This document shows, in pieces, positions 35,904 through 64,000 of a stretch of DNA of 64,000 bases. The DNA is taken from positions 178,597 to 242,596 of IMG/VR virus record IMGVR_UViG_3300033153_015063, one strand, 5' to 3'. Position 1 is the first letter of the stretch, and every line of letters starts with the position of its first letter. A model generated the notes under the pieces. It worked only from the letters and a program-made list of their open reading frames with translations. It ran no database searches and was not told the origin of the DNA. A program made the translations under genes and the position numbers.

Positions 35904-36647
35904 TTACTCGGTCCTTTTCAGGACCTTTTTACCGAGTGGCCCGATATCATAATAGACTGATTTGCCACGTTTAGATTTGATGATATAACCGTCGTCAGCC
36001 CATCCACCCAGTATCATGCCACCCTGACGCCCACCTGGAAGCATACCCGCTTTTTTCAGCTCGGTCTGGGCAACAGATCCCTCTTTCTCCAGATGGATGA
36101 TAAGGTTGTGTTTTTTCGAACCATCTCTCACGGCACCAGGTCCGACCAGGTCATCTTCGACCTTTTCCTTCCAGTTGGGGACGTCCTTGTTCTGGACTAC
36201 AATTTTCTTTAGTGCGGTCTTGTAGCGTTTGGCCCTACTTCCATACCCGTAGTTTACCTTCACGAACTCGTCGATGAACTGATTTTTCCAGGTGTCAGGC
36301 TTGAGTCTGGTTGTGGTTGGGTCGTCGGCCTGGATGAACTTACCCTCACGCCCTTTGAACACCACACCATCAATACTCTTACCTGTCAGACCTTCGAGTT
36401 GTTTTTGGAGTTCAGCGACCTCATGGTAGGTCTTTTCGTGTTCACCGGCCGGTTCAGTGACCAACTCTGGAGTATGGTCATCAATGTCGATGATAGTTGG
36501 AGTTTTGAACCTCTCCAGGAACTCCTCCTCCGAAAGCTCAGGTGCTTCTCCCACAGGCCCCTTGTATTGTGTCTTTCCTTCCTCGTACTCGTACCTGTAT
36601 CTGTTACCGGACCCTGGTGGAATCTTGTTGGACTGGCGGCGGTTCAC
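35904..36647 (-). CDS. shared-leader family member 4 (C-terminal winged-helix payload)
   Basis: IPPGSGNRYRYEYEEGKTQYKGPVGEAPELSEEEFLE; GTG start overlaps the stop of member 5; MarR-like C-terminus. Confidence 0.85.
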   Translation of the reverse strand: MNRRQSNKIPPGSGNRYRYEYEEGKTQYKGPVGEAPELSEEEFLERFKTPTIIDIDDHTPELVTEPAGEHEKTYHEVAELQKQLEGLTGKSIDGVVFKGREGKFIQADDPTTTRLKPDTWKNQFIDEFVKVNYGYGSRAKRYKTALKKIVVQNKDVPNWKEKVEDDLVGPGAVRDGSKKHNLIIHLEKEGSVAQTELKKAGMLPGGRQGGMILGGWADDGYIIKSKRGKSVYYDIGPLGKKVLKRTE

Positions 36648-37153
36648 TTTTTTTGTGGTATATGGAAGAAATCCTCCGTTTCCTTCACATTTTCCATCTT
36701 ACGGAGCGATTTTTGAAGAGCTGTACTGGCCTGAAACTTTTCGACCACGATACCATTCTCATAATCTGATATTATTTGACGTAAAGCATCCTGATATCTT
36801 CCCTGACCTCGATATAATTCATCGAGCTCCGTGTTCCAGATTGCTATCAGGTTGATATTATCTATTCCGACCTGTTCTTTGAATTTTTTACTATCGCCAA
36901 CGTACTCAAAACCAGCGATATGGCCGATTCGTTTTCGGCCATCATAGATACCATATATCGCTGTTTTATACTCAGACTTCAAACGACGCACCCTGGTTGT
37001 ATATGAGACGTTTTTACCAGCCATCCTCTCCATGAACTCAGCCTCTCCCAGCTCAGGTGCTTCTCCCACAGGTCCTTTGTACTGTGTCTTGCCATTCTCG
37101 TACTCATAGCGGTATCTGTTGCCACTTCCAGGAGGGATTTCAACTATGGACAT
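36644..37153 (-). CDS. shared-leader family member 5 (GNAT-like payload)
   Basis: Leader, then ELDELYRGQGRYQDAL resembling the GNAT acetyl-CoA-binding motif A. Confidence 0.8.
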   Translation of the reverse strand: MSIVEIPPGSGNRYRYEYENGKTQYKGPVGEAPELGEAEFMERMAGKNVSYTTRVRRLKSEYKTAIYGIYDGRKRIGHIAGFEYVGDSKKFKEQVGIDNINLIAIWNTELDELYRGQGRYQDALRQIISDYENGIVVEKFQASTALQKSLRKMENVKETEDFFHIPQKK

Positions 37154-37190
37154 TGGAGAGTGATAGGGGAGGGAGGATAAGAAGATTGTG

Positions 37191-37243
37191 GTAGGATGGT
37201 GGGATGGAGTAGGATGGTGGGATGGAGTAGGGAGGTGGGAGGA
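37191..37243 (+). repeat. 18-bp tandem repeat (GTAGGATGGTGGGATGGA x2 plus a degenerate third copy)
   Basis: Read directly at 37191..37208, 37209..37226 and 37227..37243, in a divergent intergenic gap. Confidence 0.8.
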
Positions 37244-37281
37244 GAGTGACGATGGTGATGGGGCAGTCTTTATAAAGACGG

Positions 37282-39372
37282 TTGGTTGTTTTCAATTACG
37301 TGCCCAGACCCAATATCAAACACTTCATTGCGAAGGAAAACACTAACCTCAACGATTCATTTATTCCTTGGTCGGAGATTGCACCTTATTTTGTCTTCGA
37401 AAAACCACGTAAGATACAAGAAGTATTATTGCGGGTCATCATATCAGCAATAGAGAAAGGTAGGAAAGAAATCGTTCTATCAGCACCAACGGGGATAGGT
37501 AAGTCTGTAATTGCTGTCACAATTGCAAAGTGGATAGAGGCTCAGGGTAAAAAATCTCTCTTTCACATCCCCAGAAAAGCACTTGTAGACCAATACCAGG
37601 AAGTATTTCCTGAGTATCCACTCATCAAAGGCAACAACGAATACAGATGTATATTATCACACAATGAACTGAAGAAAGCTGGATTCGAGCCTGGTTACTA
37701 CACCAAGGATAAAGCACCTTGTTCAGTTACCAAGTATTTTTGTAAATACAAACCACGTCGAAGGGGAGAAAAAGATGGGTTGTTACCAGCACTCGCCACG
37801 TCGGCCAAGAGGGGTGAAATGGTGTGTGGCAATGACCCGTGCCCATTCTGGGAGGAGAAGATAAAGTGTCTCAACAGTAAAATCATCTTTGCATCTTCAA
37901 TGTTTGCTTACATGGAGAGACAGACCAGTGACGATTTTGGTGTCGTCGAATTTGGCGTCTATGATGAGGGTGACCACGTCGAGACCGATATAATGTCCGT
38001 TGAGACAGTGAAAATCACAGAAAAAGAACTCGAAGAGTTCATGGGCCATCCAATGCAGATTCCCAATAACATCAAGGATATAAAAGAATGGATACCGGTT
38101 GTAGAAAAACTTCGGGAGGGTGCTTTAGCCAGAGGTATTTATCTGAGTGGTAAGATAAAGGATATGGAAATTGGTACAAAGAATAAAGGGTTGATATTAA
38201 GAGAAAAAATGAGATTGAGATTCTCTGAGGAAAGATTAGAAAAGTATGATGATATTATCAGCTACATCAAAAAGTGGCCTGATACTATGGTGAGTGCCAT
38301 TGGTGAGGATGAGATTAAGGGTGAGAAGGTTGGGTATGTTGAGTTCAAACCAGCTTTTGTTCGTCAGTTTGCAGGTAAACATCTCCGAAGGAGTTCAACC
38401 AGGCTTTTTATGTCAGCGACCATCCTCCACCCGGTTCTGTTCGGCCATAACATCGGAATGTATGATTTCCTGTATATCGAGGTCCCAGAAAGCCCATTTC
38501 CTACCAAAAATAGGGGCATAGAACTCCATAATGTGGGACGGGTAAACAACAATACCATCCGGGAGTTAATGCCCAAAATAATGGCAGAAATCAAGCAAAT
38601 CGTGGCCGATAATCAGGGTAGGTCTGGACTCATCATCCCCGTATCTCACAGGATGAGGCTTGAAATCTACCGTGCATTGATGAAAGATATCTCGTTCAGT
38701 AAAATCCAGGAAAATGGGGTAGAGTGCCCATATTGTGGTCAGAGGTTGTGGCAGTTGTTCCCGCATGTAGAAGACATCCATAAAACAAACACTTATCAAT
38801 TTCTACGTGAGTTTGGAAGGGACATTGAATTGTTCTCACCGGCAGCGTCTATCATCACCAATGGTTCACATACACTGGAGCGTAAGAAAGCTATGGCCCT
38901 TTTCTCGCAGGGTTTAATCTGCCCGGAGTGTGGCGACTATGTTCACGGTGGCGGTTCCGTACTTCATTGCCGTAGATGTAGAATACATTACAAAAAGAGT
39001 ATGTTGAAACCGATGCCCAGGTTGTGGATAAGCACCTATCCTAAGGAGGGATTCGACGGTAAGGATGATGTTGTGAGATATATTATCATCCCGAAAATGT
39101 TCTATGCCTATCTTGGAGATCCGTTGGTTCAGAAACGTAAGGAAGTACAACCAACATCTTATCTTATCGACGCACTCCGTTCTCTCATCCAGGCATCGGG
39201 ACGTGGAACCAGACATGAGGATGACTATTGTAACACTCATGTTCTCGACAGTGGTATCAATACTCTGTTGGGTATGATTAGACGGTCTGAGGGTAAGCTC
39301 AGGAACGATTATCTACCCAATGCCAGTATTATACCCAGATGGTGGGAAAAGGCCATGACAAAGAAAAAATGA
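37282..39372 (+). CDS. XPD/DinG/Rad3-family SF2 helicase with Fe-S and zinc-ribbon insertions
   Basis: SAPTGIGKS, KGNNEYRC, YDEGDH, MSATI and QASGRGTR; the start may be GTG 37300 given the TATA at 37269. Confidence 0.85.
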   Translation: MVVFNYVPRPNIKHFIAKENTNLNDSFIPWSEIAPYFVFEKPRKIQEVLLRVIISAIEKGRKEIVLSAPTGIGKSVIAVTIAKWIEAQGKKSLFHIPRKALVDQYQEVFPEYPLIKGNNEYRCILSHNELKKAGFEPGYYTKDKAPCSVTKYFCKYKPRRRGEKDGLLPALATSAKRGEMVCGNDPCPFWEEKIKCLNSKIIFASSMFAYMERQTSDDFGVVEFGVYDEGDHVETDIMSVETVKITEKELEEFMGHPMQIPNNIKDIKEWIPVVEKLREGALARGIYLSGKIKDMEIGTKNKGLILREKMRLRFSEERLEKYDDIISYIKKWPDTMVSAIGEDEIKGEKVGYVEFKPAFVRQFAGKHLRRSSTRLFMSATILHPVLFGHNIGMYDFLYIEVPESPFPTKNRGIELHNVGRVNNNTIRELMPKIMAEIKQIVADNQGRSGLIIPVSHRMRLEIYRALMKDISFSKIQENGVECPYCGQRLWQLFPHVEDIHKTNTYQFLREFGRDIELFSPAASIITNGSHTLERKKAMALFSQGLICPECGDYVHGGGSVLHCRRCRIHYKKSMLKPMPRLWISTYPKEGFDGKDDVVRYIIIPKMFYAYLGDPLVQKRKEVQPTSYLIDALRSLIQASGRGTRHEDDYCNTHVLDSGINTLLGMIRRSEGKLRNDYLPNASIIPRWWEKAMTKKK

Positions 39373-39408
39373 AATTGGGCACAATTTGTATAATATCTTT
39401 AATTATCT

Positions 39409-39639
39409 TTAATGGCCAATTGTAGTAATTTCCTCATTGATCCGCTTGCATGATTTACACGTGGTGTCCATCCTTGTGCTGCACCATCCATCCAGCCACA
39501 TTTGAGTTATAAGCGTCTCACGATCACTTCTGTATTGAAGACCGCAAAGTGTTTTATTTCCAGTGAGTGGGACGACGTGAATTTTAGTTGTTGGTGACAT
39601 TACTCTGAAACCATCACTTGTCCTGGCCGGATATTTCAT
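39409..39639 (-). CDS. small Cys/His zinc-binding protein
   Basis: H...TLCG...CKSC pattern. Confidence 0.45.
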   Translation of the reverse strand: MKYPARTSDGFRVMSPTTKIHVVPLTGNKTLCGLQYRSDRETLITQMWLDGWCSTRMDTTCKSCKRINEEITTIGH

Positions 39640-39643
39640 AGTT

Positions 39644-39841
39644 TCAGATCACCTCAATTCCCATCTTTTTCAATTTAGATACAGCAATCCGTCTACACCT
39701 CTTACAGACAGAACCACATTCCAAGAACGGATGAATATAAGACAGCACTCTGCGGTTGTTATGTGTGGTTTGATTTAACCTATAAGATGTCAAAGAACCA
39801 AGATGAGCTTGACACCATAGATAGATGTGTACTGTTGACAT
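39644..39841 (-). CDS. small Cys/His zinc-binding protein
   Basis: H...C...CKRC pattern, similar in architecture to its neighbour. Confidence 0.4.
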   Translation of the reverse strand: MSTVHIYLWCQAHLGSLTSYRLNQTTHNNRRVLSYIHPFLECGSVCKRCRRIAVSKLKKMGIEVI

Positions 39842-39857
39842 CAGATCACCGATACTG

Positions 39858-40559
39858 TCATTTTGAAAGATAGGTTGCTGGGTCCCAACCGCAGAGTAAC
39901 GTCAGGTCCTGGTTCGAGGCGATCTTGTCGGCGAGGTGAACGATAAGGGGTATGATGGCGTGATTGGTGATGTCGGCCGGTGGCTTACCCCACTTCCCAT
40001 GATGAAGGAGGACCGCACGACACACCTGCTCGGGGAACTTCAGGTCCCAAAGAAAGTCTGCTATCATCTTGTTGTGGTCGTCGGCCAGTTTCCAGTCAGG
40101 ATTCCATATAGGTTTTTTGCCTTCTCCAAGATGTGGGTTGTTCTCCTTCGAACAACCTTTCAGGATGTCATGGAGAAGACAAGCTGCCATTACATGGTCG
40201 AACTCTTCCGAACCAGGCTCGATGTTGTAGGCATCCAGTAAGGTAAGGGCAACCGCACAGACCCGGTTGGTGTGGATGACCAGACCTTTGATGTCTCGCT
40301 CATCAAGTGGATGATGTTTAACCGACGAGGGGCTGACCCAGAACTGGCGTGGGGCCTTCCTGAAGGCATTGATAACCTTTGCGTGAAGCTCGGCGTTCTT
40401 GATGTAAAGTAGGAATCTGTCGAGCCCAGATGATCTGAGAATACCTTTCTCCCCATCTACCTGAAGCTCTCTTCCTTGGTCGTTTCCCAACGCTTGTTCG
40501 AGGTTTCTCTTCAGGACCACCAATTCTACCGGGAGAACTTTATGTTTCTCGGTCTGCAT
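39858..40559 (-). CDS. HD-domain phosphohydrolase (YhaM/Cbf1-like)
   Basis: KHH...GLVIHT, CLLHDILK, HHGKW and HLADKIAS. Confidence 0.8.
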   Translation of the reverse strand: MQTEKHKVLPVELVVLKRNLEQALGNDQGRELQVDGEKGILRSSGLDRFLLYIKNAELHAKVINAFRKAPRQFWVSPSSVKHHPLDERDIKGLVIHTNRVCAVALTLLDAYNIEPGSEEFDHVMAACLLHDILKGCSKENNPHLGEGKKPIWNPDWKLADDHNKMIADFLWDLKFPEQVCRAVLLHHGKWGKPPADITNHAIIPLIVHLADKIASNQDLTLLCGWDPATYLSK

Positions 40560-40642
40560 GGTTGTGATTTGAGAAACTATGTTTAAAAAGATTTAGTTAA
40601 CGTATCACTCCCGGGCTTTTACCAGAAGCCCCGAGGCGAATC

Positions 40643-40825
40643 CTATAAATGTTTTAAATTCTTTAAATATCCTCTATTTTGATAATCACTCAAATGATAT
40701 ATCAATTCATCTTTTGAGTACATGGTAGCTGGAAAAGGGATATTATGAGTTATTTTCAACCTCTTCCCCAGCTTAACCAACTCTGCTTTTGTCATTCTCT
40801 CCAAATTATATTCCATATTGTTCAC
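40643..40825 (-). CDS. small helix-extension-helix (Rho-N/LEM-like) protein
   Basis: LERMTKAELVKLGKRLKI...SKDELI. Confidence 0.4.
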   Translation of the reverse strand: MNNMEYNLERMTKAELVKLGKRLKITHNIPFPATMYSKDELIYHLSDYQNRGYLKNLKHL

Positions 40826-41094: not shown

Positions 41095-41125
41095 ACATCA
41101 CCTGTTGCCTCTTACTAACAATCAG

Positions 41126-41167
41126 CCTTTATATACTTTCAGGGAAATCAACCGTAAAAAGCGTAAA
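41126..41167 (-). promoter_or_regulatory. conserved promoter cassette, copy E
   Basis: Plus-strand CCTTTATATACTTTCAGGGAAATCAACCGTAAAAAGCGTAAA. Confidence 0.8.
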
Positions 41168-41174
41168 AGAACAA

Positions 41175-41702
41175 TTATTTCCTGGATGTACTTCTACGAC
41201 TGCCCCCTTCCCCCATCGCCTTCTGAGATTTCCGACGGAGTTCTTGAAGTGTGAGGTTACCCCAACGAAGCTCAGCCTCTTTGACACCATCATCTGTGAT
41301 ATAACCGTAGATGACACTAAAATAATAAGGACTACCAGCCTCTCTAAAACGTTCACCCTTCTGTCTGGTCAGGCCCCTCTTGTTGAGGCTATGTATGATA
41401 CGGAGATCAACGTTCGACAACCCAGGAGATTCCAATCCAGTTTCGTGTGTTCTTCCTCGTCCACCAGTTGTTTTATCCTCGGTCACCAGACGATAGTGGG
41501 CATAGAGACGGAGGAGATACTCCTCCTGACTGACGCTGAGCTCAACCTGGCCCTTTCTCTTCATCCTCTCCAGGAACTCCTCCTCACTCAGCTCAGGTGC
41601 ATTGCCGACCGGCCCCTTGTACACGGTCTTTCCTTCCTCGTAATCGTAGCGATAGCGGTTGCCTGAACCTGGAGGAATCTCTACAGTGGTCGGATGTTGT
41701 GA
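41175..41702 (-). CDS. shared-leader family member 6, lacking a canonical start codon (wHTH-like payload)
   Basis: The frame is open from the TAA of member 7: SQHPTTVEIPPGSGNRYRYDYEEGKTVYKGPVGNAPELSEEEFLERM, with CCG where other copies have ATG. Confidence 0.75.
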   Translation of the reverse strand, partial: SQHPTTVEIPPGSGNRYRYDYEEGKTVYKGPVGNAPELSEEEFLERMKRKGQVELSVSQEEYLLRLYAHYRLVTEDKTTGGRGRTHETGLESPGLSNVDLRIIHSLNKRGLTRQKGERFREAGSPYYFSVIYGYITDDGVKEAELRWGNLTLQELRRKSQKAMGEGGSRRSTSRK

Positions 41703-42440
41703 TTAGGTTATGATCCTTATCCATACGTCGTTCTTTCCAGCATATCCGATAAATTTGTATTCATTTGATTGTGCCCGATTCCTGACTGCCCTCAAACCAG
41801 TGTCGTAGAATGGTATAATATTCAATATCTCTTCTTGGCTCATATTTTCCTGGGCCCACGCCTTTGGATTATTCGATATTTCTTCTTTGAAGTCATTAAA
41901 TGCAGATGTTTGCCAACTCCACCCTATCGCTGCTTCATAGTCATCCTCATCCCATCCATCTTCCCAATCGTCAGGTGGAAAATACTCGTCTGGGTTGAAA
42001 TGTTCTTCACGTAGGTAATCCTGACCTTGCCAACCCAGAAAATCGTGCCACTTCACGTGGTCCATGAGTACCGGGAGATATCTATCTGGAACGTCTTTAA
42101 CGCTATTAAATCTATTTGAAAGGTCAATATCTACACCTTCTTTGTTGATGAAGAACTCATACTTTTCATTCCCTTTCTTGATAACACCACCACACGTTCT
42201 GGTAATGTCAACCTCCAGATCCTTTCTATCGACGCCCCAGTGACTTGCCAGTAAGTCAATCTCTGGTATGAACTCATCGTCCCAATCGCCCACACCACCA
42301 ACCATCATCTCCAGGAACTCCTCCTCTCCCAGCTCAGGTGCTTCTCCCACAGGCCCCTTGTAGATTGTAGCCTTGGTCTCAGCATCATAGACGTATTTGT
42401 ACCTGTTGCCGGACCCTGGGGGGATTTCGACGACGGTCAT
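41703..42440 (-). CDS. shared-leader family member 7 (acidic payload)
   Basis: MTVVEIPPGSGNRYKYVY...YKGPVGEAPELGEEEFLEMM. Confidence 0.85.
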   Translation of the reverse strand: MTVVEIPPGSGNRYKYVYDAETKATIYKGPVGEAPELGEEEFLEMMVGGVGDWDDEFIPEIDLLASHWGVDRKDLEVDITRTCGGVIKKGNEKYEFFINKEGVDIDLSNRFNSVKDVPDRYLPVLMDHVKWHDFLGWQGQDYLREEHFNPDEYFPPDDWEDGWDEDDYEAAIGWSWQTSAFNDFKEEISNNPKAWAQENMSQEEILNIIPFYDTGLRAVRNRAQSNEYKFIGYAGKNDVWIRIIT

Positions 42441-42485
42441 TGGAGAGTGATAGGGCCGGAGAGTATAAAAAGATTGGTAGTTACT

Positions 42486-42821: not shown

Positions 42822-42910
42822 GTTATCACGTCCACTTTATGAGTAGTCATGTTTAGGGAAAGAAGTGGTGAGTATAAAAAGATGATGAGAGACCACTTGT
42901 TTTGTTACCT

Positions 42911-46201: not shown

Positions 46202-46576
46202 CTATCTACCCCTCAACTCTTTCGTCTTCCTGGCCAACGCCAACGAACCTCCCAACGTTTTAATAGCCTCACGTGGGGCGTGTTCAGGTAGCATAAGTCT
46301 ACCCTCATAAACAATCGCCACATCTGAACCATTGTAGTAGATTAATCTGGGGCAGTTTTGTTTACACTGGCATCGTGTGGCTTTTGCCACCCCTTTCTCA
46401 TCTCGACGGTCTTCCATCAACAGAAGAGTAGGTGGTTCTTGATCCATAGCCGCCATGAACTCCTCCTCCGTCAACTGAGGGCTATCCCCGACCGGCCCCT
46501 TGTAGACCGTAGATCCACCTTCGTACTCGTACCTGTATTTATTCCCTGAACCCTCAGGTATCTCTACGGTGGTCAT
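46202..46576 (-). CDS. shared-leader family member 8
   Basis: MTTVEIPEGSGNKYRYEYEGGSTVYKGPVGDSPQLTEEEFM. Confidence 0.85.
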   Translation of the reverse strand: MTTVEIPEGSGNKYRYEYEGGSTVYKGPVGDSPQLTEEEFMAAMDQEPPTLLLMEDRRDEKGVAKATRCQCKQNCPRLIYYNGSDVAIVYEGRLMLPEHAPREAIKTLGGSLALARKTKELRGR

Positions 46577-46619
46577 TGGAGAGTGATAGGGCCGGAGAGT
46601 ATAAAAAGATGGTGATTAG

Positions 46620-47780
46620 TTAACCGTCACTCGTATTGAAGTACTGACCACATTTATCCTTGACGCAGAGACCCCAGTGTTTCAGGGTTGAACAGTTCGG
46701 GGTATTGTATGGTGGATCGTTGAAAGCTATCTGGTAGACTTGTATCTTCGTTTCCTCTTCACTCCAGTCAGCCATGTTGAGGTTCTTGAAAAACTCGATG
46801 ACTTTCTCAGGTGGCCACTTGTAGTAGTTGAGTAGTAGTACTGCCACGTAGAGTCTGGTGATGTGGGATGGTTCCGATGAACCCAATATATCGTTGTGGA
46901 TACATGGTTTTTGGAACATCTTTTTGATTACTTCTGTCTGTGGATGAGTGTAGTTTCCTTTGTATTGGCTATAGACAGCAATACCTTTACTACCACCCAT
47001 TTTCAACCAATCTTCTATCCTGATATCAAATCTTTCCATGAACTCATCCAACGTCAACAGGTCTTTTGTCCTATCAATAACCGGTTTGATAGGATGCCAC
47101 TTCTTACATCTCTTGATGATTGTGGCGTGGTTAAATTCCATCATAATATCGTTCGGGACGACCATACAGTAAGTATCCTTTACAAAGTATCGACTGTTCT
47201 TGAATTTCGAGTATCTGTATCCAGGCACTCTTACCAGACGCCGATAGTCGCCCTTTACACGGATATCAAGTGTCCGAAGTAACCTGAAGTTGCCTGGATT
47301 GACCAACTTATCATCATCACCCCGTTGCCATAACCACCCCTTTGCCCCAATCCAGTTCGAGACCGCCCTCAACTTGAGTTTGAGCTCTGTGGCCTGTTCT
47401 ATCTTCCTGATGGAGAAACGTTGTGGTTTCAGGATGACATAAGAGTGATAACCCTTTGAACCAGTAAAGATACCGACGTGCTGAAAATTCTCTTTCTCAC
47501 ACCATTCAATTATTTCCCTGATGTCACTCAGGGCGTGTTCTGGCTTCTTTTCATCGTCCAGGTCGTTATAGAGATGGTCCACGATACACCAGCGTCCTGG
47601 TTTGAAGCAGTAGAGGGAGACGAAGCAGCAGTAACCCATCTTCTCCCACATCTTCAGGGCGTTGAATAATTGCCGCTTATCAGATACCCGTTGTTGGTGT
47701 GGATTCCCCATGTAACGTGGCATCTTGACAAAGTTCAACACGTGACCGGTTTCGGAGTACCATTTTTCCTCGTCAACCAT
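46620..47780 (-). CDS. priS: archaeo-eukaryotic primase: PriS catalytic domain fused to a PriL Fe-S C-terminal domain
   Basis: NDLDD, FTGSKGYH and RLVRVPG; then PCI...SHITRL...PNCSTLKHWGLCVKDKC. Confidence 0.85.
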   Translation of the reverse strand: MVDEEKWYSETGHVLNFVKMPRYMGNPHQQRVSDKRQLFNALKMWEKMGYCCFVSLYCFKPGRWCIVDHLYNDLDDEKKPEHALSDIREIIEWCEKENFQHVGIFTGSKGYHSYVILKPQRFSIRKIEQATELKLKLRAVSNWIGAKGWLWQRGDDDKLVNPGNFRLLRTLDIRVKGDYRRLVRVPGYRYSKFKNSRYFVKDTYCMVVPNDIMMEFNHATIIKRCKKWHPIKPVIDRTKDLLTLDEFMERFDIRIEDWLKMGGSKGIAVYSQYKGNYTHPQTEVIKKMFQKPCIHNDILGSSEPSHITRLYVAVLLLNYYKWPPEKVIEFFKNLNMADWSEEETKIQVYQIAFNDPPYNTPNCSTLKHWGLCVKDKCGQYFNTSDG

Positions 47781-49032: not shown

Positions 49033-50181
49033 TCAGAAATATACATCTTCATCTTCTTTTTTATTTTCATTTTCAGTCTTTTTTGCAGATGCGGTTGCCT
49101 CTTTTGAAAAAGAGATATCTTCGGGTTTTTTTGGCCCTTCAATCTCATTTTGTGGTTGAACCTCGTCATCTGAAGTGTTGGTTGAAGTTTCGTGATAGAG
49201 ACCACGTTCAACCAACGTCTCCCTCAGGTGTTTAAAGTCTCGTTCTTCATCAATACGGTCAAATACAGTGCATTTTTCCAAAAAATACATATGTTTCCAG
49301 TAAGTGACACGATTGACACAAAGTGTCCGGTCTTTTTTCTCCTTATTTTTTATGGTTCTTTTCAGGTCTGGGGTACCACCGTAACGGTTTTTTACATCAC
49401 GGGATTTTTCGAGGAATGCCCAGACATTAGCGGGGTTGTCGGGATCTTTGTGGAGGAAGATAGTGTTGTCAACTCTGAACCCATTATTCTTCTGGCCTGC
49501 GGGCCTTCGGCCAATGATTTTAAAACGTTCCTCTTTCGAGTAGACATCTTTGGCCGGTGCTGTCCAGATGAAGTTGACGCCACTCTTCTTCAGGGCATCA
49601 GCAACGTTGTTATGCTTTGGGTTGATGGCGTTGTAGTCGGTCATCGGGTCGAGACGTTCATTATCGTCCATTCTCATTTCACCGAGATTCATGTTCCGCT
49701 TGTGTTGGGTGTACCATTCCTGGGCCCCGGTTGAATCGTCCCACCACCCTGCGATGGTATCACAGATTATCCAGGCTGAATAGAAACCTTTTTCACCGAT
49801 TTCTTTTTCCTTAACCTTTTGCCACTCACGGCATTCGTATATATACCAGTCCACAAGTTTCTCGATATCGTTCATATCCTTTGGATATGCTATTTCGACA
49901 GATTGCATGTACTCATGTTTGAATTTTTTCAGAATGGGTTTAAACCCATAGTCGGTGTCGATGACCCTGATGCATATGTCCTCAGGTTCAAGACCGAGTA
50001 CCAGATGAAGGTAGTCGATCACGGAACAGGCAAAGTACGTTTTACCTGTCCCCTCTGGGCCGTAGATGAGAACTCCATGACGTCGTTCTTCGTCGTCGAT
50101 GGGATGGTCGAAGGTGACGTGTTCTACAGACTTTCTCTTTTTTATCCCTGGTGTCTTTATTTCTATAGCCAAACACGTCAC
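49033..50181 (-). CDS. RecA-fold ATPase (Sak4/RadB-like, AAA_24)
   Basis: LIYGPEGTGKT, VIDTDYG and IICDTI; next to the RPA-like gene. Confidence 0.7.
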   Translation of the reverse strand: MTCLAIEIKTPGIKKRKSVEHVTFDHPIDDEERRHGVLIYGPEGTGKTYFACSVIDYLHLVLGLEPEDICIRVIDTDYGFKPILKKFKHEYMQSVEIAYPKDMNDIEKLVDWYIYECREWQKVKEKEIGEKGFYSAWIICDTIAGWWDDSTGAQEWYTQHKRNMNLGEMRMDDNERLDPMTDYNAINPKHNNVADALKKSGVNFIWTAPAKDVYSKEERFKIIGRRPAGQKNNGFRVDNTIFLHKDPDNPANVWAFLEKSRDVKNRYGGTPDLKRTIKNKEKKDRTLCVNRVTYWKHMYFLEKCTVFDRIDEERDFKHLRETLVERGLYHETSTNTSDDEVQPQNEIEGPKKPEDISFSKEATASAKKTENENKKEDEDVYF

Positions 50182-57186: not shown

Positions 57187-57187
57187 T

Positions 57188-57616: not shown

Positions 57617-57690
57617 AATGGAGATACAAATAGGTAGATTCTTCACGATTCTTTCTCTACGAATTAAGATGAAAAATAGTTGGTGACGAT

Positions 57691-59061: not shown

Positions 59062-60948
59062 ATGTCGTTAACAGAAGCGAACGAGAACGAGAATCGTTTC
59101 GAACTTGGAGGGGACGATGAGGATGAAGAATTTAGCCTCTCCAAACTACGTGAACAAGTTGAGGTGTTTGACAACAAAGACAAAGGTAGACAGGAGAGTG
59201 CTGAGGCACTTACCTATCGCTGGTTGGAGTTGATGTTGGAGGGCGGACGGGACGAGATACTCTACGACCTGAACGTTCGAGAGTTGGTGGATATCGTCCC
59301 ATTCGCCCGACGCATCATACACTCTAAAATCGGACATATTCTTGGTCTGATGAAAAAGATAGCTGGTCTCCTGTACAAATACGAGTTGTTCGGTGAGTTC
59401 TACAGCAGCAGGACGCCGGGTATGTTCGGTGAAGACTACATCTCTATTCAAGGAGAACTTATCGAGAAGCAACTTGAGATGATAAAACTGATGCTTCCTG
59501 CTCTTGGAGCTGCCGACACTACATTAGATCAATTATCCTCAAACTTCGACTCTATTGGCTATGAACTGCAGAAGCAGGCAGTACCGAAGATGATGAGAGA
59601 GACCATCGTGGTTCTGTATCTACTTGCCAGAGAAGGTTCTGTCGAAGAGGCAAATCTCCAATTAATGGCAAAACGGCATGGTATCGAACACGTCCAGAAG
59701 CAGGTTCTCGAAGGTATTGAGTTCGGATGGGTCGAACGTGATGAGAACAAATTGAAGTGGAAATCGGCAAAGATGAGAACCTTCATGCTTACTATAGGTG
59801 AGATATCTGCAGTTGAGACACTTCCCGAAATCGTGAAGCAAAAGGAGGAAGATAACAACGCATTACGTCGTCAGGTTCGTAAGTTATCAAACATCGTGTT
59901 TAAATTAAAAGGTGGTCACGAGCTACTGGAAGAGTTTGATATGAGCGAACAGGAACTGGAAGAAATCGCCGAGATGAGTCCTGGTCCAGACCCCGAAATC
60001 AAAGCGTTGTTAGATGTTTTCACTGGTCAGATGACTGGTCTGGTAGGTGAACTGAAAGAGAGTAACAGGATACGGGACGAAGAGACACGCATCCTCCGAG
60101 AAGAGATATCTGACACCAAATTCACACCTTTCACACCGCCACCCCGGATCGAGGAATCGAGTCATTTTGATACGACCGACACTTTCTCATTAGATGATGA
60201 CCAAGAACTCGAAAACATACCTGTTTCTTTTGGGCTCGATGACGTTACTGAATCCGATGAGATTGATGAAAGTGATGGCGACACCACAGCCACAGATGAC
60301 ATCGTTGAACCTGACAAAGGTGTGAAGAAAAAAAAGCAGAGGGAAATAACGGATGAGGAGTTGGAAGAGGAAGAGAAAAGAAAAAAAGAGGCCCGTTCAA
60401 TGTTCGAAAAAACCAAGTTCGAAGCAAGAGATTTTGTTATGTGTGAGTTTTATCTGGGCCCAAAGGAAATAAAAGAACTGGAAGATAGACTGTCTACTCT
60501 TGATGAAGGTTCTGATGAATGGATACAGACAAAGGTAACGCTGGAGATGAAACCAGATACACATTGTAAGATAGGCTTCAAGCCAACTACTCTGGTGATG
60601 GACAACAAAACATGTATGTTTCAACTCCCGGTCCCAGACGAAGATGGATTTTATTGTGGTGTTACTGCATTGGTAAATAAGGGGTATGATGATGAAACAA
60701 TTTCTACTCTACTTGGTGATAGGGCAGCTACCTTTAAATGCCCTCATTGTGATGAGTGGTTCAAGAAGGAAATCTCCCTTAAGAGTCATATAAAAAGAAA
60801 TCATAAAGAAGAGAAAAAAACGGATGTCGAGGAGAAGCTCCCTTTTTGTACCTGCCGGACCTGTGGTTACATATTCCATGACGAAAAAGAGTATGACCTT
60901 ACTGATGGTAAATGCCCATCAGGTTGTGGTAAGGTCGAAAAAGAGTAG
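59062..60948 (+). CDS. coiled-coil protein with wHTH-like segment, acidic linker, C2H2 zinc finger and zinc ribbon
   Basis: CPHCDEWFKKEISLKSHIKRNH and CRTCG...CPSGCG. Confidence 0.7.
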   Translation: MSLTEANENENRFELGGDDEDEEFSLSKLREQVEVFDNKDKGRQESAEALTYRWLELMLEGGRDEILYDLNVRELVDIVPFARRIIHSKIGHILGLMKKIAGLLYKYELFGEFYSSRTPGMFGEDYISIQGELIEKQLEMIKLMLPALGAADTTLDQLSSNFDSIGYELQKQAVPKMMRETIVVLYLLAREGSVEEANLQLMAKRHGIEHVQKQVLEGIEFGWVERDENKLKWKSAKMRTFMLTIGEISAVETLPEIVKQKEEDNNALRRQVRKLSNIVFKLKGGHELLEEFDMSEQELEEIAEMSPGPDPEIKALLDVFTGQMTGLVGELKESNRIRDEETRILREEISDTKFTPFTPPPRIEESSHFDTTDTFSLDDDQELENIPVSFGLDDVTESDEIDESDGDTTATDDIVEPDKGVKKKKQREITDEELEEEEKRKKEARSMFEKTKFEARDFVMCEFYLGPKEIKELEDRLSTLDEGSDEWIQTKVTLEMKPDTHCKIGFKPTTLVMDNKTCMFQLPVPDEDGFYCGVTALVNKGYDDETISTLLGDRAATFKCPHCDEWFKKEISLKSHIKRNHKEEKKTDVEEKLPFCTCRTCGYIFHDEKEYDLTDGKCPSGCGKVEKE

Positions 60949-60951
60949 TTT

Positions 60952-61032
60952 TTAATCTCCGAACCAGATGTACCACAGGGCATAGAGACCAACCACTACA
61001 CCAATCACGTAAAGCCATATTGGGATATCCAT
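60952..61032 (-). CDS. 26-aa single-pass membrane peptide, missed by the ORF track
   Basis: MDIPIWLYVIGVVVGLYALWYIWFGD; TATA-like ATAATATA about 21 nt upstream. Confidence 0.5.
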   Translation of the reverse strand: MDIPIWLYVIGVVVGLYALWYIWFGD

Positions 61033-61069
61033 AACAGGCAATCCCGAATGTGGTATATTATGTTTACTG

Positions 61070-61675
61070 CTAGTAATCCATGTGGAGTTCCATTGCTATA
61101 ACCCTTTTTTCCACGGGCTTTCTCCCAAGACCTTTGATGTCGCCCCAGAACAACTCACTCACACCACGCCATATCTGGTAATCCTCTTTGGGGTAGTATG
61201 CATCTCGGCTGAGAGGATTATATTCTTCACGTTCGGCACCCCAGAACTCATATTCGTGGAGATTGGTCAGTGCTTTGAACTCGCTATTGGTCATTTTCTT
61301 CGGGACCCATACCCACTTGTGGACCTTCTCACAGCCCATTTTCCCCTTATCCGCTATAAACTTCATCTCTCGTTTCTCATAGGGACCAATACTCCACCTG
61401 TCTCTGAAGGCTTCAACATATTTTGCTGTATGTTTACCTTCGGTGGACGTATCATCAAAAGGGGCGACGAATACGAATACTTCATCCTCTATCGGTTCCC
61501 TGACCATCTCCCGCCCCTCAAACTCTCCCCTCGATGCCACCTTCATCCTCTCCAGGAACTCCTCCTCCGTCAACTGAGGGCTATCCCCGACCGGCCCCTT
61601 GTAAACCGTAGCTCCCTCTTCATATTCATAGCGGTATCTATTCCCTGAACCCTCAGGTATCTCTACAGTGGTCAT
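61070..61675 (-). CDS. shared-leader family member 9
   Basis: MTTVEIPEGSGNRYRYEYEEGATVYKGPVGDSPQLTEEEFLERM; ATG at 61675 lies 23 nt after TTTATATA. Confidence 0.85.
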   Translation of the reverse strand: MTTVEIPEGSGNRYRYEYEEGATVYKGPVGDSPQLTEEEFLERMKVASRGEFEGREMVREPIEDEVFVFVAPFDDTSTEGKHTAKYVEAFRDRWSIGPYEKREMKFIADKGKMGCEKVHKWVWVPKKMTNSEFKALTNLHEYEFWGAEREEYNPLSRDAYYPKEDYQIWRGVSELFWGDIKGLGRKPVEKRVIAMELHMDY

Positions 61676-61726
61676 CAAGGAATACAATGGGTGTTGAGTA
61701 TATAAAGAGTTCTAACCTCCCCTCCC

Positions 61727-61771
61727 TTTTACGCTTTTTACGGTTGTTTGGCCTGAAAGTATATAAAGACC
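61727..61771 (+). promoter_or_regulatory. conserved promoter cassette, copy G
   Basis: TTTACGCTTTTTACGGTTGTTTGGCCTGAAAGTATATAAAGACC. Confidence 0.8.
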
Positions 61772-61802
61772 AAGATGCGGGTAAGAGTTAGGTGATGCAA
61801 AC

Positions 61803-62354
61803 ATGACCGACAGTAAACAGAAACGGACCTTATATGAACCCTTCTACATCGGCCACAACATCCTCAATCCTCGTGATATCGAGGATGTAGAAGAACGTGT
61901 GAAGGCCAAATCCAGACTGAACAACGGCATCGGACGGACCGCCGGAGACCTGTGGAACGACTGGGGGTCTGATGGAATCTACGATTTCCTGGTAGATGAA
62001 ATCGGATACAGCGACAGCCGGACCGTTGGGACCGGGGCCCGGGGTGGTTCCGAGTGTCCAGGGAACACCGGGAAGTTGGCCGAGATGTTTTGGGATGAAA
62101 TCGGAGAGCGTCGTCAAAAGAAAATCGGCGATGAGATGGATCGCCTCGGTCTCATCGAACCGGATCTCCCGAAGGTAGTAGTCGAAGAGGCTACTGTGGA
62201 CAATAAACCCATCTACAAGGTCTTTCTCCACATCAGCAACCAGAAGCTTCAGCTCTCCAATCGTTTCGGTCTGGATATCTTCGCCTACCGCCGGGACGCC
62301 AGCACCACCGTCGATGAGTTCTTCAATGCGTGGTGGAAAGAGAACAAGCAGTAG
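61803..62354 (+). CDS. hypothetical protein under promoter cassette G
   Basis: AGGTGA RBS; GC-rich codon usage; isolated plus-strand gene. Confidence 0.7.
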   Translation: MTDSKQKRTLYEPFYIGHNILNPRDIEDVEERVKAKSRLNNGIGRTAGDLWNDWGSDGIYDFLVDEIGYSDSRTVGTGARGGSECPGNTGKLAEMFWDEIGERRQKKIGDEMDRLGLIEPDLPKVVVEEATVDNKPIYKVFLHISNQKLQLSNRFGLDIFAYRRDASTTVDEFFNAWWKENKQ

Positions 62355-62417
62355 GCCCAACCAACCACTACCCCAAACCCTTTATTTTATCCCTTCTCTT
62401 TTCTTTATTGTGCTAAC

Positions 62418-63164
62418 CTAGAATCTCATGGCACCTAATCGCTGTTCTGCCACTTCACAATATTCCTTGGACATGTCTATTCCGATGAACCGACGCCCAA
62501 GCCTGCTGGCGACGGCTGTGGTCGTTCCTGCCCCGTTAAAGGGGTCTAAAACAGTGTCTCCAGGCCATGAAAAGAGTTTGATGAGGCGATATACCAGTTC
62601 CTCGGGAAACATCGCTGGGTGCCCAAAATCCCGCATCTTTCTCTCCGGGGCGATGGACCACTTAGCCGTTGTCCATTGCTTGAACTCGTCGCCATCCAGG
62701 TCGCTTTCGATCCCATCTGGTCTCTTCTTTGTGTAGGTATCTTTACAGAACACTTCGATGAACTCCCAGGTGTATTTGAGATATGGGTTGCTCGGGGATT
62801 TCCAGCTCCCCCAGGCCGTGTACTTACAGTTGTAGTTGTTCTTCTCCCACAGTATCTCGCCCTTCCATAGGAATCCAAGGTCGGTAAGGTCTTTTGTGAT
62901 GATGTGATGGGTTGGTTGATAGACTTTCCAGTTGGGTTGGATGACGATACACAACCGACCACCTGGTTTCAAAACTCCCCTTATCTTTTGCCAGATACCA
63001 TACAACCACTCGAAGTACTGGTCCCAATCCTGGACATCATCGTGGGTATCGTATTCTATCCCGTAGTTGTAAGGTGGGCTGGTCACTACCAGGTCAATAG
63101 AGTTTTTACCCAGAGTAGATATCTCATCGTAGGCATCTCCACAGATGATGGAATCTTCCATCAA
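62418..63164 (-). CDS. DNA methyltransferase (N4-C/N6-A, beta class)
   Basis: VTSPPY, HPAMFP and VLDPFNGAGTT. Confidence 0.92.
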   Translation of the reverse strand: MMEDSIICGDAYDEISTLGKNSIDLVVTSPPYNYGIEYDTHDDVQDWDQYFEWLYGIWQKIRGVLKPGGRLCIVIQPNWKVYQPTHHIITKDLTDLGFLWKGEILWEKNNYNCKYTAWGSWKSPSNPYLKYTWEFIEVFCKDTYTKKRPDGIESDLDGDEFKQWTTAKWSIAPERKMRDFGHPAMFPEELVYRLIKLFSWPGDTVLDPFNGAGTTTAVASRLGRRFIGIDMSKEYCEVAEQRLGAMRF

Positions 63165-63481
63165 AACCGCAGGCCACCGAATATCCGAGAACTCCAGATC
63201 CTGAGTGGCCGGCCGTGATTGTGGTTGACCCGGGTAGACCGCTTGAACTCATCGGTCTGGGTGCAGATGCCATCTTTTTTTGCTTCCATCATCACAGGAC
63301 CCATGATCCTTGGTTCTCTGGGAGTTTCGAGAGAAGACTGTTCTATCTTCTCCCATACATCATCAGTCGTGAACTTCCGTTTGGCCAACGCAATCAGACG
63401 CACGAAGTGGCCAACCTCATCTTTCCAGGTCTTTTCGTCCATGATAGGAAAACACCGGTCGAGTTTAAAAAGATTAATCAT
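63161..63481 (-). CDS. conserved phage HTH-like hypothetical protein
   Basis: FTTDDVW...EPRIMGPVM...HGRPLRIWSS. Confidence 0.6.
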   Translation of the reverse strand: MINLFKLDRCFPIMDEKTWKDEVGHFVRLIALAKRKFTTDDVWEKIEQSSLETPREPRIMGPVMMEAKKDGICTQTDEFKRSTRVNHNHGRPLRIWSSRIFGGLRF

Positions 63482-64000
63482 CGAACTCTCTTCTTACATC
63501 CTTTGCGTGTTCTATCACGTCTCCAACACTGTCGCCATCTTCCCAACTGACACCCCTACTCCACTTAATGTCACCATCTCCGTCATAGTAGTAGACAACG
63601 ACAGATTCCTCATAGTGTTCGAAGCCGTACTCACCCTTCCCGGTCCAATATGAACAAACTTCCTGTGTCATCTTCGTCTTTCTGGTCACATGAGCTTTTT
63701 TGATGACGTCTTCGATGGTGTCGCCCTCCTTCCAGTAGGCAACTCCACCCCACGAGAAATTCTTTCCTGAACGACCATAGGATATGACAGTGACTCTCTC
63801 CCCTTTATGTTCGAACGTATATGTGATGCCTTTCAATTTGATTTTATCCAGGTCTCTTGACGTCCTCTCATCCACCACCTTCATAATCTCCAGGAACTCC
63901 TCCTCCGAAAGCTCAGGTGCTTCTCCCACAGGCCCCTTGTATTGTGTCTTTCCTTCCTCGTACTCGTACCTGTATCTGTTACCGGACCCTGGTGGAATCT
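63474..64000 (-). CDS. shared-leader family member 10 (5' end beyond the window)
   Basis: The frame is open to the window edge: IPPGSGNRYRYEYEEGKTQYKGPVGEAPELSEEEFLEIM. Confidence 0.85.
   Translation of the reverse strand, partial: IPPGSGNRYRYEYEEGKTQYKGPVGEAPELSEEEFLEIMKVVDERTSRDLDKIKLKGITYTFEHKGERVTVISYGRSGKNFSWGGVAYWKEGDTIEDVIKKAHVTRKTKMTQEVCSYWTGKGEYGFEHYEESVVVYYYDGDGDIKWSRGVSWEDGDSVGDVIEHAKDVRREFDD

What the first reader, a model, noticed from the sequence alone, without database searches (positions are those of the whole stretch)
36512..64000. Leader copies are nucleotide mosaics, including a perfect 114-bp duplicate 27 kb apart
Seen: 36512..36625 (member 4) and 63887..64000 (member 10) are identical over 114 nt, and the identity stops at the leader/payload junction. 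Members 7 and 8 share an identical 40-nt promoter/start block (42435..42474 = 46571..46610). Member 7 shares its first 20 coding nt with member 2 (32951..32970 = 42421..42440), and its CCAGCTCAGGTGCTTCTCCCACAGG block with member 5. Members 8 and 9 share AACTCCTCCTCCGTCAACTGAGGGCTATCCCCGACCGGCCCCTTGTA. Inference: ongoing gene conversion or recombination among leaders lets payloads be exchanged or captured, so the leader doubles as a recombination handle. The element's own Sak4-like, RPA and exonuclease genes could drive this.
Basis: partly seen in the sequence, partly recalled or inferred. Interest (0 to 1): 0.72.

Follow-up and report, generated by a model that had tools for sequence, protein, structure and literature searches.

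The report
Recombining promoter-leader cassettes in giant virus
A 242-kb, probably archaeal, virus genome carries 42 copies of a ~180-bp cassette (promoter plus a 45-residue N-terminal protein domain) fused to unrelated genes, and these copies demonstrably overwrite pieces of one another by recombination, which keeps the tags alike but has not been shown to swap the cargo genes.

Summary
The window is the last 64 kb of a single 242,596-bp IMG/VR virus record. Its 10 "leaders" belong to a family of 42, spread over both strands of the whole genome (about 14% of ORFs).

The repeated unit is a BRE/TATA promoter (about 45 nt) plus about 135 nt that encode a confidently modelled beta3-alpha domain. 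No curated family or fold match was found. Payloads are almost all unrelated to each other.

Mosaicism is statistically solid:
- PHI P<2e-4 on all sites and P=3e-4 on synonymous third positions.
- 129 of 435 pairs pass a GENECONV-type test at P<=0.01, against 4.35 expected.

Leaders evolve in concert. Payload orthologues in other metagenomes keep a leader, but each leader resembles its own genome's paralogues. The orthologue of member 4 is 69% identical in the payload and 46% in the leader, while member 4's leader is 100% identical to member 10's. That points to short-tract ectopic gene conversion.

Payload exchange or capture is not demonstrated. The assembly could not be checked with reads: the 114-nt copy ends at the record's last base, and the record's 64-nt terminal repeat lies inside this repeat family.

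The parts
36512..36625 (-). 114-nt exact tract in member 4 (F36), leader nt +13 to +126. It is bounded by the payload on one side and by the 3' end of member 5 on the other.
63887..64000 (-). 114-nt exact tract in member 10 (F42). It ends at the last base of the record, and its last 64 nt are repeated at the record start (the 'DTR').
63474..64000 (-). Member 10 (F42) gene. Its first 13 coding nt and its promoter lie at the start of the record. The cassette is a patchwork: nt 0-55 equal F10/F18, nt 13-126 equal F36, and the promoter resembles that of F27.
35904..36647 (-). Member 4 (F36) gene. It has a GTG start overlapping the stop of member 5 and no promoter of its own. Its first five leader codons are replaced. 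The payload has an orthologue, P0156.
36644..37198 (-). Member 5 (F37): gene 36644-37153 plus promoter block 37154-37198.
35112..35897 (-). Member 3 (F35): gene 35112-35852 plus promoter block.
32491..33015 (-). Member 2 (F34): gene 32491-32970 plus promoter. Cassette positions -35 to +57 (93 nt) are identical to F16, which lies outside the window.
41175..41693 (-). Member 6 (F38). The leader has no start codon (CCG in place of ATG) and lies in frame directly behind the stop of member 7. A 114-nt tract is identical to F31, 57 kb away.
41703..42485 (-). Member 7 (F39): gene 41703-42440 plus promoter. Its 40-nt promoter/start block is identical to that of member 8.
46202..46621 (-). Member 8 (F40): gene 46202-46576 plus promoter. 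Positions +9 to +82 (74 nt) equal F05, and +72 to +119 equal member 9.
61070..61720 (-). Member 9 (F41): gene 61070-61675 plus promoter. Positions -37 to +7 equal F07/F15/F17, +9 to +70 equal F07, and +81 to +132 equal F32.
7686..8525 (-). Member 1 (F33): gene 7686-8480 plus promoter. Positions -42 to +7 (50 nt) equal F24.
49033..50181 (-). Sak4-like single-strand annealing protein, a candidate driver of short-homology recombination.
   Evidence: phrog_124, 5.4e-9; AAA_24, weak
33208..34020 (-). PD-(D/E)XK nuclease, a candidate recombination exonuclease.
   Evidence: PF12705, 5.9e-19

Best explanation
The window is the end of a roughly 242.5-kb genome of a virus that is probably archaeal and related to tailed viruses. 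About 300 ORFs are present. Of these, 42 begin with the same ~180-nt cassette: a BRE/TATA promoter with a short 5' region (about 45 nt), followed by about 135 nt that encode a compact, acidic N-terminal domain of about 45 residues. The domain is modelled as three beta strands and a helix, with invariant PxGSGN and YKGPVG loops.

Shown: the cassette copies are patchworks. Different 20-115-nt stretches of one copy are identical to different paralogues, irrespective of distance or strand.

Inferred: this is non-reciprocal, short-tract homologous exchange (ectopic gene conversion) among the dispersed copies in replicating viral DNA. The virus's own Sak4-like annealase and PD-(D/E)XK nuclease plausibly catalyse it.

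Shown: the net effect is concerted evolution. Leaders within this genome resemble each other more than they resemble the leaders of orthologous genes in related viruses.

The 114-nt pair in the finding is one such event. Member 4's leader was overwritten by member-10-type sequence along the whole stretch that the two still shared, while its payload and operon position stayed as in its orthologue.

Inferred and untested: the domain is a common address or docking tag that couples many unrelated effector proteins to one shared viral or host partner. Known payloads include RelA/SpoT-like, Ham1 NTPase and CCA-adding-like enzymes. Homogenisation would keep all tags compatible with that partner.
For: Family and unit:
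- 42 members were found by tblastn and HMM search.
- Self-BLAST shows that homology runs from about -30/-50 to +125/+140 and stops at the payload.
- Payloads are unrelated except for two pairs.

Mosaic structure:
- PHI on all 69 informative sites: P<2e-4 (0 of 5000 permutations reached the observed value).
- PHI on 20 synonymous third positions of invariant codons: P=3e-4.
- GENECONV-type test: 129 of 435 pairs at P<=0.01 against 4.35 expected, and 68 at P<=0.001.
- Segment types reassort: of 34 pairs that share the first third of the leader, 8 share the second third and 1 shares the last third.
- Per-member painting shows different partners for different stretches.
- Synonymous-codon identity has a median of 0.56, against 0.44 at saturation, with a tail up to 1.0.

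Concerted evolution:
- All 36 own leaders have an own-genome nearest neighbour.
- For 5 of 7 payload-homologue pairs, 34-35 of the 35 own paralogues are closer than the homologue's own leader.
- 35 of 42 own copies have 3 residues before the VEI core, whereas 86 of 122 external ones have 6.
- YKGP occurs in 34 of 36 own copies and 33 of 122 external ones.
- F36 against its orthologue P0156: payload 69% aa and 66% nt identity; leader 46% aa and 53% nt identity. F36 against paralogue F42: leader 100% nt identity.

Protein domain:
- AlphaFold model from a 58-sequence alignment: pLDDT 88.
- 284 proteins at E<=1e-3 in 1.84 billion representatives, with the domain at or near the N-terminus in almost all.

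Recombination genes.

No effect of distance or orientation.
Against: - No reads were available, so none of the identical tracts is verified. The record end coincides with the end of the repeat.
- The three perfect pairs all involve atypical copies that lack a start codon, lack a promoter or are frameshifted. Their tract ends coincide with the ends of homology, which pure gene conversion does not predict particularly.
- Part of the amino-acid-level concerted signal could come from co-evolution with a shared partner rather than from conversion.
- The proposed function of the domain has no direct evidence. Fold searches and family libraries gave nothing.
Confidence: 0.8

Rival explanations
1. Recombination handle for cargo. 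The conserved leader serves mainly as a homology handle through which payload genes are exchanged between loci or genomes, or through which newly acquired genes get captured behind a leader.
For: - Cellular-type enzymes (Ham1, RelA/SpoT, CCA-adding-like) carry the leader, so fusions to acquired genes have happened.
- F08 and F28 share one exact 114-nt leader fragment joined at the same nucleotide to unrelated ORFs, with no flanking similarity.
- About half of the members (20 of 42) sit next to another member in runs of two to five, where flanking leaders could mediate cassette exchange.
- Related metagenome contigs are dense with leader genes.
Against: - Eight payloads keep their leader in homologues, likely orthologues, at 31-69% payload identity, so the pairings are stable over long times.
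- Most tract end points lie inside the leader, not at the leader/payload junction.
- Payloads have no paralogous copies elsewhere that would witness movement.
- No population data were available.
Confidence: 0.25
2. Assembly artefact. The identical tracts, and in particular the 114-nt pair, arise from collapse or bubble-merging of similar repeats. Under this reading the apparent terminal repeat is a break at a repeat, not a true genome end or circle.
For: - The record ends exactly at the last identical base.
- The 64-nt 'DTR' lies wholly inside the repeat, and its first 30 nt occur three times in the record.
- IMG/VR's completeness call rests on that DTR.
- No reads and no second assembly of either junction were available.
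Against: - The internal copy sits in unique flanks.
- Joining the ends yields a complete, typical cassette.
- The mosaic signal comes from 30 copies and hundreds of pairs, including synonymous sites.
- Collapse cannot create second copies of a tract.
- The concerted-evolution signal relies on independent assemblies.
Confidence: 0.07
3. No exchange at all. The likeness reflects purifying selection on a short domain plus codon bias, and the patchwork is chance homoplasy.
For: - The domain is strongly constrained, with 17 invariant residues.
- Most pairs are close to synonymous saturation.
- The 20-nt m2/m7 block is not significant on its own.
Against: - Incompatibility between sites rises with distance, also for synonymous third positions of invariant codons.
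- Non-coding promoter blocks take part in the exchange.
- Exact 81-114-nt tracts occur against a median identity of 0.69.
Confidence: 0.03
4. Mobile cassette. The promoter-leader unit is itself a small transposable or homing element that inserts in front of genes.
For: - The unit is discrete at about 180 nt, with fairly sharp outer limits.
- Identical fragments occur at unrelated sites.
- A transposase gene is present in the genome.
Against: - Inspection of the cassette ends by eye showed only a 6-nt GAACTC/GAGTTC inverted match between them, and no target duplications were seen. No inverted-repeat search was run.
- Outer limits vary from copy to copy.
- Orthologues show stable positions.
Confidence: 0.05

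Closest known systems
Concerted evolution by gene conversion in viral gene copies (for example homogenisation of vaccinia K3L arrays; PMC6115191, found, abstract only read)
   Same: Recombination between copies within a viral genome spreads sequence variants from copy to copy, so copies in one genome resemble each other.
   Different: Here the copies are not tandem duplicates of a whole gene. They are a ~180-nt promoter plus N-terminal module shared by 42 otherwise unrelated genes, dispersed on both strands of a 242-kb genome. The tracts are 20-115 nt long.
Polymorphic toxin and effector families with a conserved N-terminal delivery domain and variable C-termini (Rhs, CdiA, MIX/FIX-type T6SS effectors; from my own knowledge)
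   Same: One conserved N-terminal module sits in front of many unrelated C-terminal modules. The conserved part can serve as homology for recombination.
   Different: No secretion apparatus, immunity genes or displaced orphan toxin cassettes were identified. The identified payloads are nucleotide or tRNA enzymes. The host genome is a virus. Payload swapping was not observed.
Capsid targeting sequence and propeptides of phage T4 and giant phages such as SPN3US (PMC5694885, listed; otherwise from my own knowledge)
   Same: A shared N-terminal element on several unrelated proteins of a large virus could direct them to one destination. A conserved [L/I/M]-x-E motif lies just before the leader's helix, which resembles the cleavage motif recalled for T4.
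   Different: The T4 element is a peptide of about 10 residues, not a folded 45-residue domain. Virion location and cleavage are untested here. No capsid, portal or protease gene was identified in this genome.
Relaxed homologous recombination by phage annealases (Sak4, Rad52-like) that produces mosaic phage genomes (from my own knowledge)
   Same: A Sak4-like gene and a nuclease are present. Exchange occurs on short, imperfect homologies.
   Different: That work concerns exchange between different phage genomes at orthologous or flanking homologies. Here the exchange is ectopic, among paralogous modules of one genome. The activity of this protein is untested.

Membership tests
Multigene family under concerted evolution by gene conversion | Paralogous copies within a genome are more alike than orthologous copies between genomes. 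| tested here: met
   All 36 own leaders have an own-genome nearest neighbour. For the F36 orthologue, the payload is 69% identical and the leader 46%, while the paralogue's leader is 100% nt identical.
Multigene family under concerted evolution by gene conversion | Mosaic sequence: incompatibility between sites increases with distance, and shared tracts are longer than a site-order permutation gives. | tested here: met
   PHI P<2e-4 on all sites and 3e-4 on synonymous sites. 129 of 435 pairs at P<=0.01 against 4.35 expected.
Multigene family under concerted evolution by gene conversion | Exchange is non-reciprocal and confined to the homologous segment, while the flanks stay in place. | tested here: inconclusive
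   Confinement to the cassette is shown, with payloads and flanks unrelated. Non-reciprocity cannot be read from one genome.
Multigene family under concerted evolution by gene conversion | Events are ongoing in the population, seen as variant junctions or tracts in reads. | not testable with these tools
   No sequencing run was listed. No other record holds either junction.
Polymorphic toxin/effector system | A conserved N-terminal module with many unrelated C-terminal modules. | tested here: met
Polymorphic toxin/effector system | The C-terminal modules are toxins paired with immunity genes, and there is a delivery apparatus. | tested here: inconclusive
   Pfam recognises only RelA_SpoT, Ham1 and DUF5661 among 41 of the 42 members scanned, with one member (F28) left out; the CCA-adding-like identification of F08 rests on a motif seen by eye. 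Immunity genes and a delivery apparatus were not searched for systematically.
Polymorphic toxin/effector system | C-terminal modules are replaced through recombination at the conserved handle (orphan cassettes). | tested here: not met
   Leader-payload pairings are conserved in the payload homologues found. The promoterless member 4 has the same arrangement in its orthologue. F08/F28 remain an unexplained exception.
T4-type capsid targeting sequence | A short N-terminal peptide that directs proteins into the prohead and is removed by the prohead protease. | not testable with these tools
   Only sequence-level observations exist: an N-terminal position and a conserved [LIM]-x-E motif. The element is a folded 45-residue domain, and no capsid or terminase family was found.
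Terminal redundancy / DTR of a complete viral genome | The end repeat is unique to the termini. | tested here: not met
   The first 30 nt of the 64-nt repeat also occur internally, at member 4. The repeat belongs to a 42-member dispersed family.

The most novel reading that the evidence does not exclude
The cassette is a virus-wide addressing system. One promoter class and one ~45-residue beta3-alpha docking domain mark about 14% of the virus's genes for co-expression and for delivery to a single shared partner or destination. These genes encode unrelated effectors, including nucleotide- and tRNA-modifying enzymes. The destination might be, for example, loading into the particle for co-injection, or recruitment to one viral machine. 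Ectopic gene conversion would then be the maintenance mechanism that keeps dozens of tags matched to their one receptor as it evolves. This would be a new protein-targeting domain family and a new organising principle for a large archaeal virus.
Probability: 0.3. Interest if true: 0.85.

Novelty: new variant of a known kind. Interest (0 to 1): 0.68.

Why it matters
- **Module-level concerted evolution.** This is a clean natural case of concerted evolution acting on a sub-genic module (promoter plus N-terminal domain) shared by dozens of unrelated genes, in a viral genome that encodes its own annealase and nuclease.
- **An undescribed domain family.** At least 284 cluster representatives carry the domain, yet no Pfam, NCBIfam or PHROG model and no fold match exists. 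It tags about one gene in seven of a 242-kb virus, so finding its partner would assign a role to many 'hypothetical' proteins at once.
- **A caution for virus catalogues.** A 'direct terminal repeat' that lies inside a dispersed repeat family is weak evidence of completeness. Such repeats probably also explain why relatives of this virus appear only as 1-4-kb contigs.

Tried and rejected
- **Reads.** Two run searches listed nothing, so read laying was never used.
- **Independent copies of the two junctions in IMG/VR.** None found.
- **Relatives in IMG/VR.** None found with either leader profile. One alignment was too diverse to search with.
- **Species genomes.** Only four weak 26-residue matches, in Streptococcus and Oribacterium, which I regard as spurious.
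- **Curated families for the leader.** Pfam, NCBIfam and PHROGs gave nothing.
- **Fold searches with the pLDDT-88 model.** PDB by Foldseek gave E>1. VIA-wide gave Z<=3.3. AFDB clusters gave E>=0.45. BFVD gave E>=0.3. The AP2, Sac7d and PC4 rows are too weak to use, and the domain is acidic (median net charge -4), which argues against DNA binding.
- **ESM Atlas.** No usable hit.
- **Self-association of the leader.** Complex prediction returned no verdict, so it is not evidence either way.
- **Distance or strand dependence of leader similarity.** None, so local tandem duplication is rejected as the source of the similarity.
- **Same phenomenon in the related metagenome contigs.** Only one non-orthologous pair shares 40 nt or more. 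The contigs are a mixture of genomes, so this is uninformative.
- **Capsid and terminase Pfam families.** No match in the genome.
- **Literature.** Searches on archaeal jumbo viruses, conserved N-terminal families and the peptide motifs themselves found no description.
- **DGR-type template/variable repeats.** Considered and dropped. The pairs are either identical or differ at all base types, and the element is N-terminal.


Full report
**Observation**

The 114-nt identity (36512-36625 = 63887-64000) does not extend by a single base towards the payloads.

The window is bases 178597-242596 of a single 242,596-bp record. IMG/VR classes this record as a virus with direct terminal repeats and 100% completeness. 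The last 64 nt of the record equal its first 64 nt.

Joining the ends completes member 10 with an ATG, the residues MTTVE and a promoter. Member 4 continues at the same point with unrelated sequence. So 114 nt is the true length of the identity, and it is not cut off by the window.

**What the leaders are**

tblastn and an HMM built from the window's leaders find 42 members on both strands of the whole genome: 39 clear and 3 divergent, 11 on the + strand and 31 on the - strand. That is about 14% of roughly 300 ORFs. The window's members 1-10 are F33-F42.

Self-BLAST and the upstream sequences show the repeated unit. It runs from about -45, which includes a BRE/TATA box near -30 and a short 5' region, to about +135, and it stops at the payload. 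The payloads are unrelated to one another except for two pairs. Pfam recognises RelA_SpoT in F09, Ham1 in F32 and DUF5661 in F26.

The leader has no model in Pfam, NCBIfam or PHROGs. It is nevertheless a real protein domain, for four reasons:
- 17 residues are invariant.
- A profile finds 284 proteins at E<=1e-3 among 1.84 billion cluster representatives. The domain sits at or near the N-terminus in almost all and is followed by variable sequence. These proteins lie on short metagenome contigs.
- AlphaFold2 with 58 sequences gives pLDDT 88 for a unit of three strands plus a helix.
- No fold search gave a usable match.

The domain is acidic, with a median net charge of -4.

**What the genome is**

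It encodes:
- gyrase A and B, a type IA topoisomerase, a family B polymerase, a class II ribonucleotide reductase and an SNF2 helicase;
- a clamp loader and a Ro60/TROVE protein;
- large proteins with thrombospondin-type and PKD repeats.

The polymerase is closest to those of haloarchaeal tailed viruses, at 30% identity. Together with the TATA-type promoters, this makes an archaeal virus the likely source. No capsid or terminase family was recognised.

**Is the mosaic real?**

Median pairwise nucleotide identity of the leaders is 0.69. Even so, there are exact tracts of:
- 114 nt (F36/F42)
- 114 nt (F08/F28)
- 114 nt (F31/F38)
- 104 nt (F13/F24)
- 83 nt (F10/F18)
- 81 nt (F11/F16).

On 30 full-length copies, several tests agree.
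- 84% of pairs of informative sites are incompatible.
- The pairwise homoplasy index is far below its permutation distribution (P<2e-4), and incompatibility rises with distance.
- Restricting the test to 20 synonymous third positions of invariant codons removes selection on the protein and within-codon effects. It still gives P=3e-4.
- A GENECONV-type test that permutes site order gives 129 of 435 pairs at P<=0.01, where 4.35 are expected.

I cut the cassette into the promoter and three leader thirds and clustered each part at 93% identity. The segment types reassort freely. A painting of the ten window members shows different partners for different stretches, and most partners lie outside the window.

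- m7/m8 is significant alone (P=5e-5).
- m5/m7 and m8/m9 are nominally significant (P=2e-4 and 3e-4).
- The 20-nt m2/m7 block is not (P=0.07).

Leader similarity does not depend on distance or orientation. Synonymous-codon identity has a median of 0.56, against 0.44 expected at saturation, with a tail reaching 1.0. So exchange is sporadic and partial, on an old family.

**Direction of the process**

Seven payloads have homologues, likely orthologues, in other metagenomes, and these also carry a leader. Payload identities range from 31% to 67%. The fusions therefore predate the split from those relatives.

Yet for five of the seven, 34-35 of the 35 own paralogues have a closer leader than the homologue does. 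All 36 own leaders have an own-genome nearest neighbour. Two genome-specific marks point the same way:
- 35 of 42 own copies have three residues before the VEI core, whereas 86 of 122 external copies have six.
- YKGP occurs in 34 of 36 own copies and in 33 of 122 external ones.

The test that bears most directly on the finding concerns member 4. Its payload has an orthologue, P0156, on JGI contigs. That orthologue also starts by overlapping the upstream gene. Payload identity is 69% aa and 66% nt. Leader identity is only 46% aa and 53% nt, and the leader has a different loop type. Member 4's leader, by contrast, is 100% identical at the nucleotide level to that of its paralogue, member 10.

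So the leader was overwritten in place, and the cargo did not move. This is concerted evolution by short-tract ectopic gene conversion. Part of the amino-acid signal could also reflect co-evolution with a shared partner, but identity at synonymous and promoter positions cannot.

**Who could do it**

A Sak4-like annealing protein (49033-50181; phrog_124, 5.4e-9) and a PD-(D/E)XK nuclease (33208-34020; 5.9e-19) are encoded in the window. From general knowledge, phage annealases recombine short, diverged homologies, which fits tracts of 20-115 nt. Their role here is an inference.

**Payload exchange or capture**

This is not demonstrated. Arguments against it as a current process:
- the conserved pairings in the payload homologues;
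- the absence of payload paralogues;
- tract ends that mostly lie inside the leader.

Arguments for it as a historical process:
- enzymes of cellular families now carry the leader;
- the unexplained pair F08/F28.

F08 and F28 share an identical 114-nt leader fragment. It starts exactly at the ATG, lacks the helix codons, and is joined at the same nucleotide to two unrelated long ORFs. Both ORFs continue in the +1 frame. One is a 459-residue CCA-adding-like enzyme that has no start codon of its own before its GGAVRD motif.

All three perfect pairs involve atypical copies. F36 has no ATG and no promoter. F31 and F38 share a start codon destroyed by the same A-to-C change. F08 and F28 are frameshifted.

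**Assembly caveat**

The record ends exactly at the last identical base of the 114-nt tract. The 64-nt terminal repeat lies inside this repeat family, and its first 30 nt occur three times in the record. That is the behaviour expected of an assembly graph at a repeat.

Circular closure is plausible, because the two half-cassettes complement each other exactly. It is not proven. The alternative resolution is two circles of 27.4 kb and 215 kb.

No sequencing run was listed, and no other record holds either junction. An artefact could affect single junctions. It cannot create the family-wide mosaic or the between-assembly concerted signal.

**Function of the domain (inferred)**

Several facts point to a shared address or docking tag rather than a catalytic or DNA-binding part:
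- a compact, acidic N-terminal domain with invariant surface loops;
- its retention on payload homologues (likely orthologues) over long divergence;
- a cassette-specific promoter flavour: 15 of the 17 motif hits that are followed by an ORF are leader genes, although the motif was derived from them;
- cargo that includes nucleotide and tRNA enzymes.

The partner is unknown. A homodimer prediction gave no verdict. A conserved [L/I/M]-x-E motif just before the helix recalls prohead-protease sites of T4-like phages. That is a lead from memory only.

**Verdict**

- The recombination inference is supported and extended to 42 copies with concerted evolution.
- The cargo-exchange inference is not supported by present evidence.
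- The phenomenon is a new variant of a known kind: gene conversion in a multigene family, acting here on a novel promoter-plus-domain module of a large, probably archaeal, virus.

Noticed in passing
outside the window: L003:13824-15294 (+) and L007:10542-11100 (+), that is genome 51824 onwards and 124542 onwards: F08 and F28 share an exact 114-nt leader fragment, from the ATG to +114, that lacks the helix codons. In both, the long downstream ORF continues in the +1 frame from the same junction. F08's ORF is a 459-residue CCA-adding/tRNA nucleotidyltransferase-like protein with no start codon of its own. The possibilities are a programmed +1 frameshift, two dead genes sharing one converted defective leader, or a sequence error.
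   Followed up: partly
window 41690-41705 and L009:11240-11275: Member 6 (F38) lies in frame directly behind the TAA of member 7 and has CCG where the ATG should be. F31, 57 kb away, has CTG there and a deletion that puts the TATA box 10 nt upstream. The two start-less leaders are identical over 114 nt and share the A-to-C change in the first codon.
   Followed up: partly
window 63937-64000 and record start (L001:1-64): The record's 'direct terminal repeat', which is the basis of its 100% completeness estimate, is 64 nt inside a dispersed 42-copy repeat and has a third, internal copy at member 4. Completeness and circularity are therefore less certain than the label says.
   Followed up: partly
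L003:15300-16106 (+), L009:13982-14656 (-), L007:9010-9756 (+): Leader-tagged enzymes: a RelA/SpoT-type nucleotidyltransferase (F09, 7e-18), a Ham1-type NTP pyrophosphatase (F32, 2e-22) and a DUF5661 protein (F26, 5e-11).
   Followed up: no
window 10403-10463, 21732-21792, 23850-23871, 26523-26583, 41120-41180: A second repeat family: a TATA-like CTTTATATA box followed by AACCGTAAAAAGCGTAAAA. The GTAAAA-N-GTAAAA motif also occurs just upstream of several leader promoters and in related contigs. On the opposite strand it reads as two T-runs, so it could be a terminator or a regulator site.
   Followed up: no
L010:1576-3090 (-), L004:980-3295 (-), L001:11763-13721 (-), L003:6118-8145 (-), L005:15337-18726 (+): Unusual cargo for an archaeal virus: a Ro60/TROVE protein with a vWA domain, gyrase A and B, a type IA topoisomerase, and a 1130-residue protein with 17 thrombospondin type 3 repeats and a PKD domain.
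   Followed up: no
window 30594-32453 (-): A 619-residue ORF whose thymidylate-synthase match (1e-24) covers only residues 130-301. The rest is unassigned.
   Followed up: no
L039:1300-2100 and the 23.6-kb JGI contig: Related contigs carry what look by eye like several tRNA genes, not checked with a tRNA finder, and an eRF1-like gene. In the 23.6-kb contig a 529-residue PolyA_pol+HD (CCA-adding type) gene lies two genes downstream of the member-4 orthologue. It is 70 residues longer than F08's ORF, so it may carry an in-frame leader.
   Followed up: no
L003:1129-1851 (-) and L002:5001-5636 (-): In F06 and F04 the leader is internal or C-terminal within a longer open frame. In F06, 115 zinc-finger-like residues lie upstream. 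A few external homologues show the same (P0074, P0100). The domain is therefore not strictly N-terminal.
   Followed up: no
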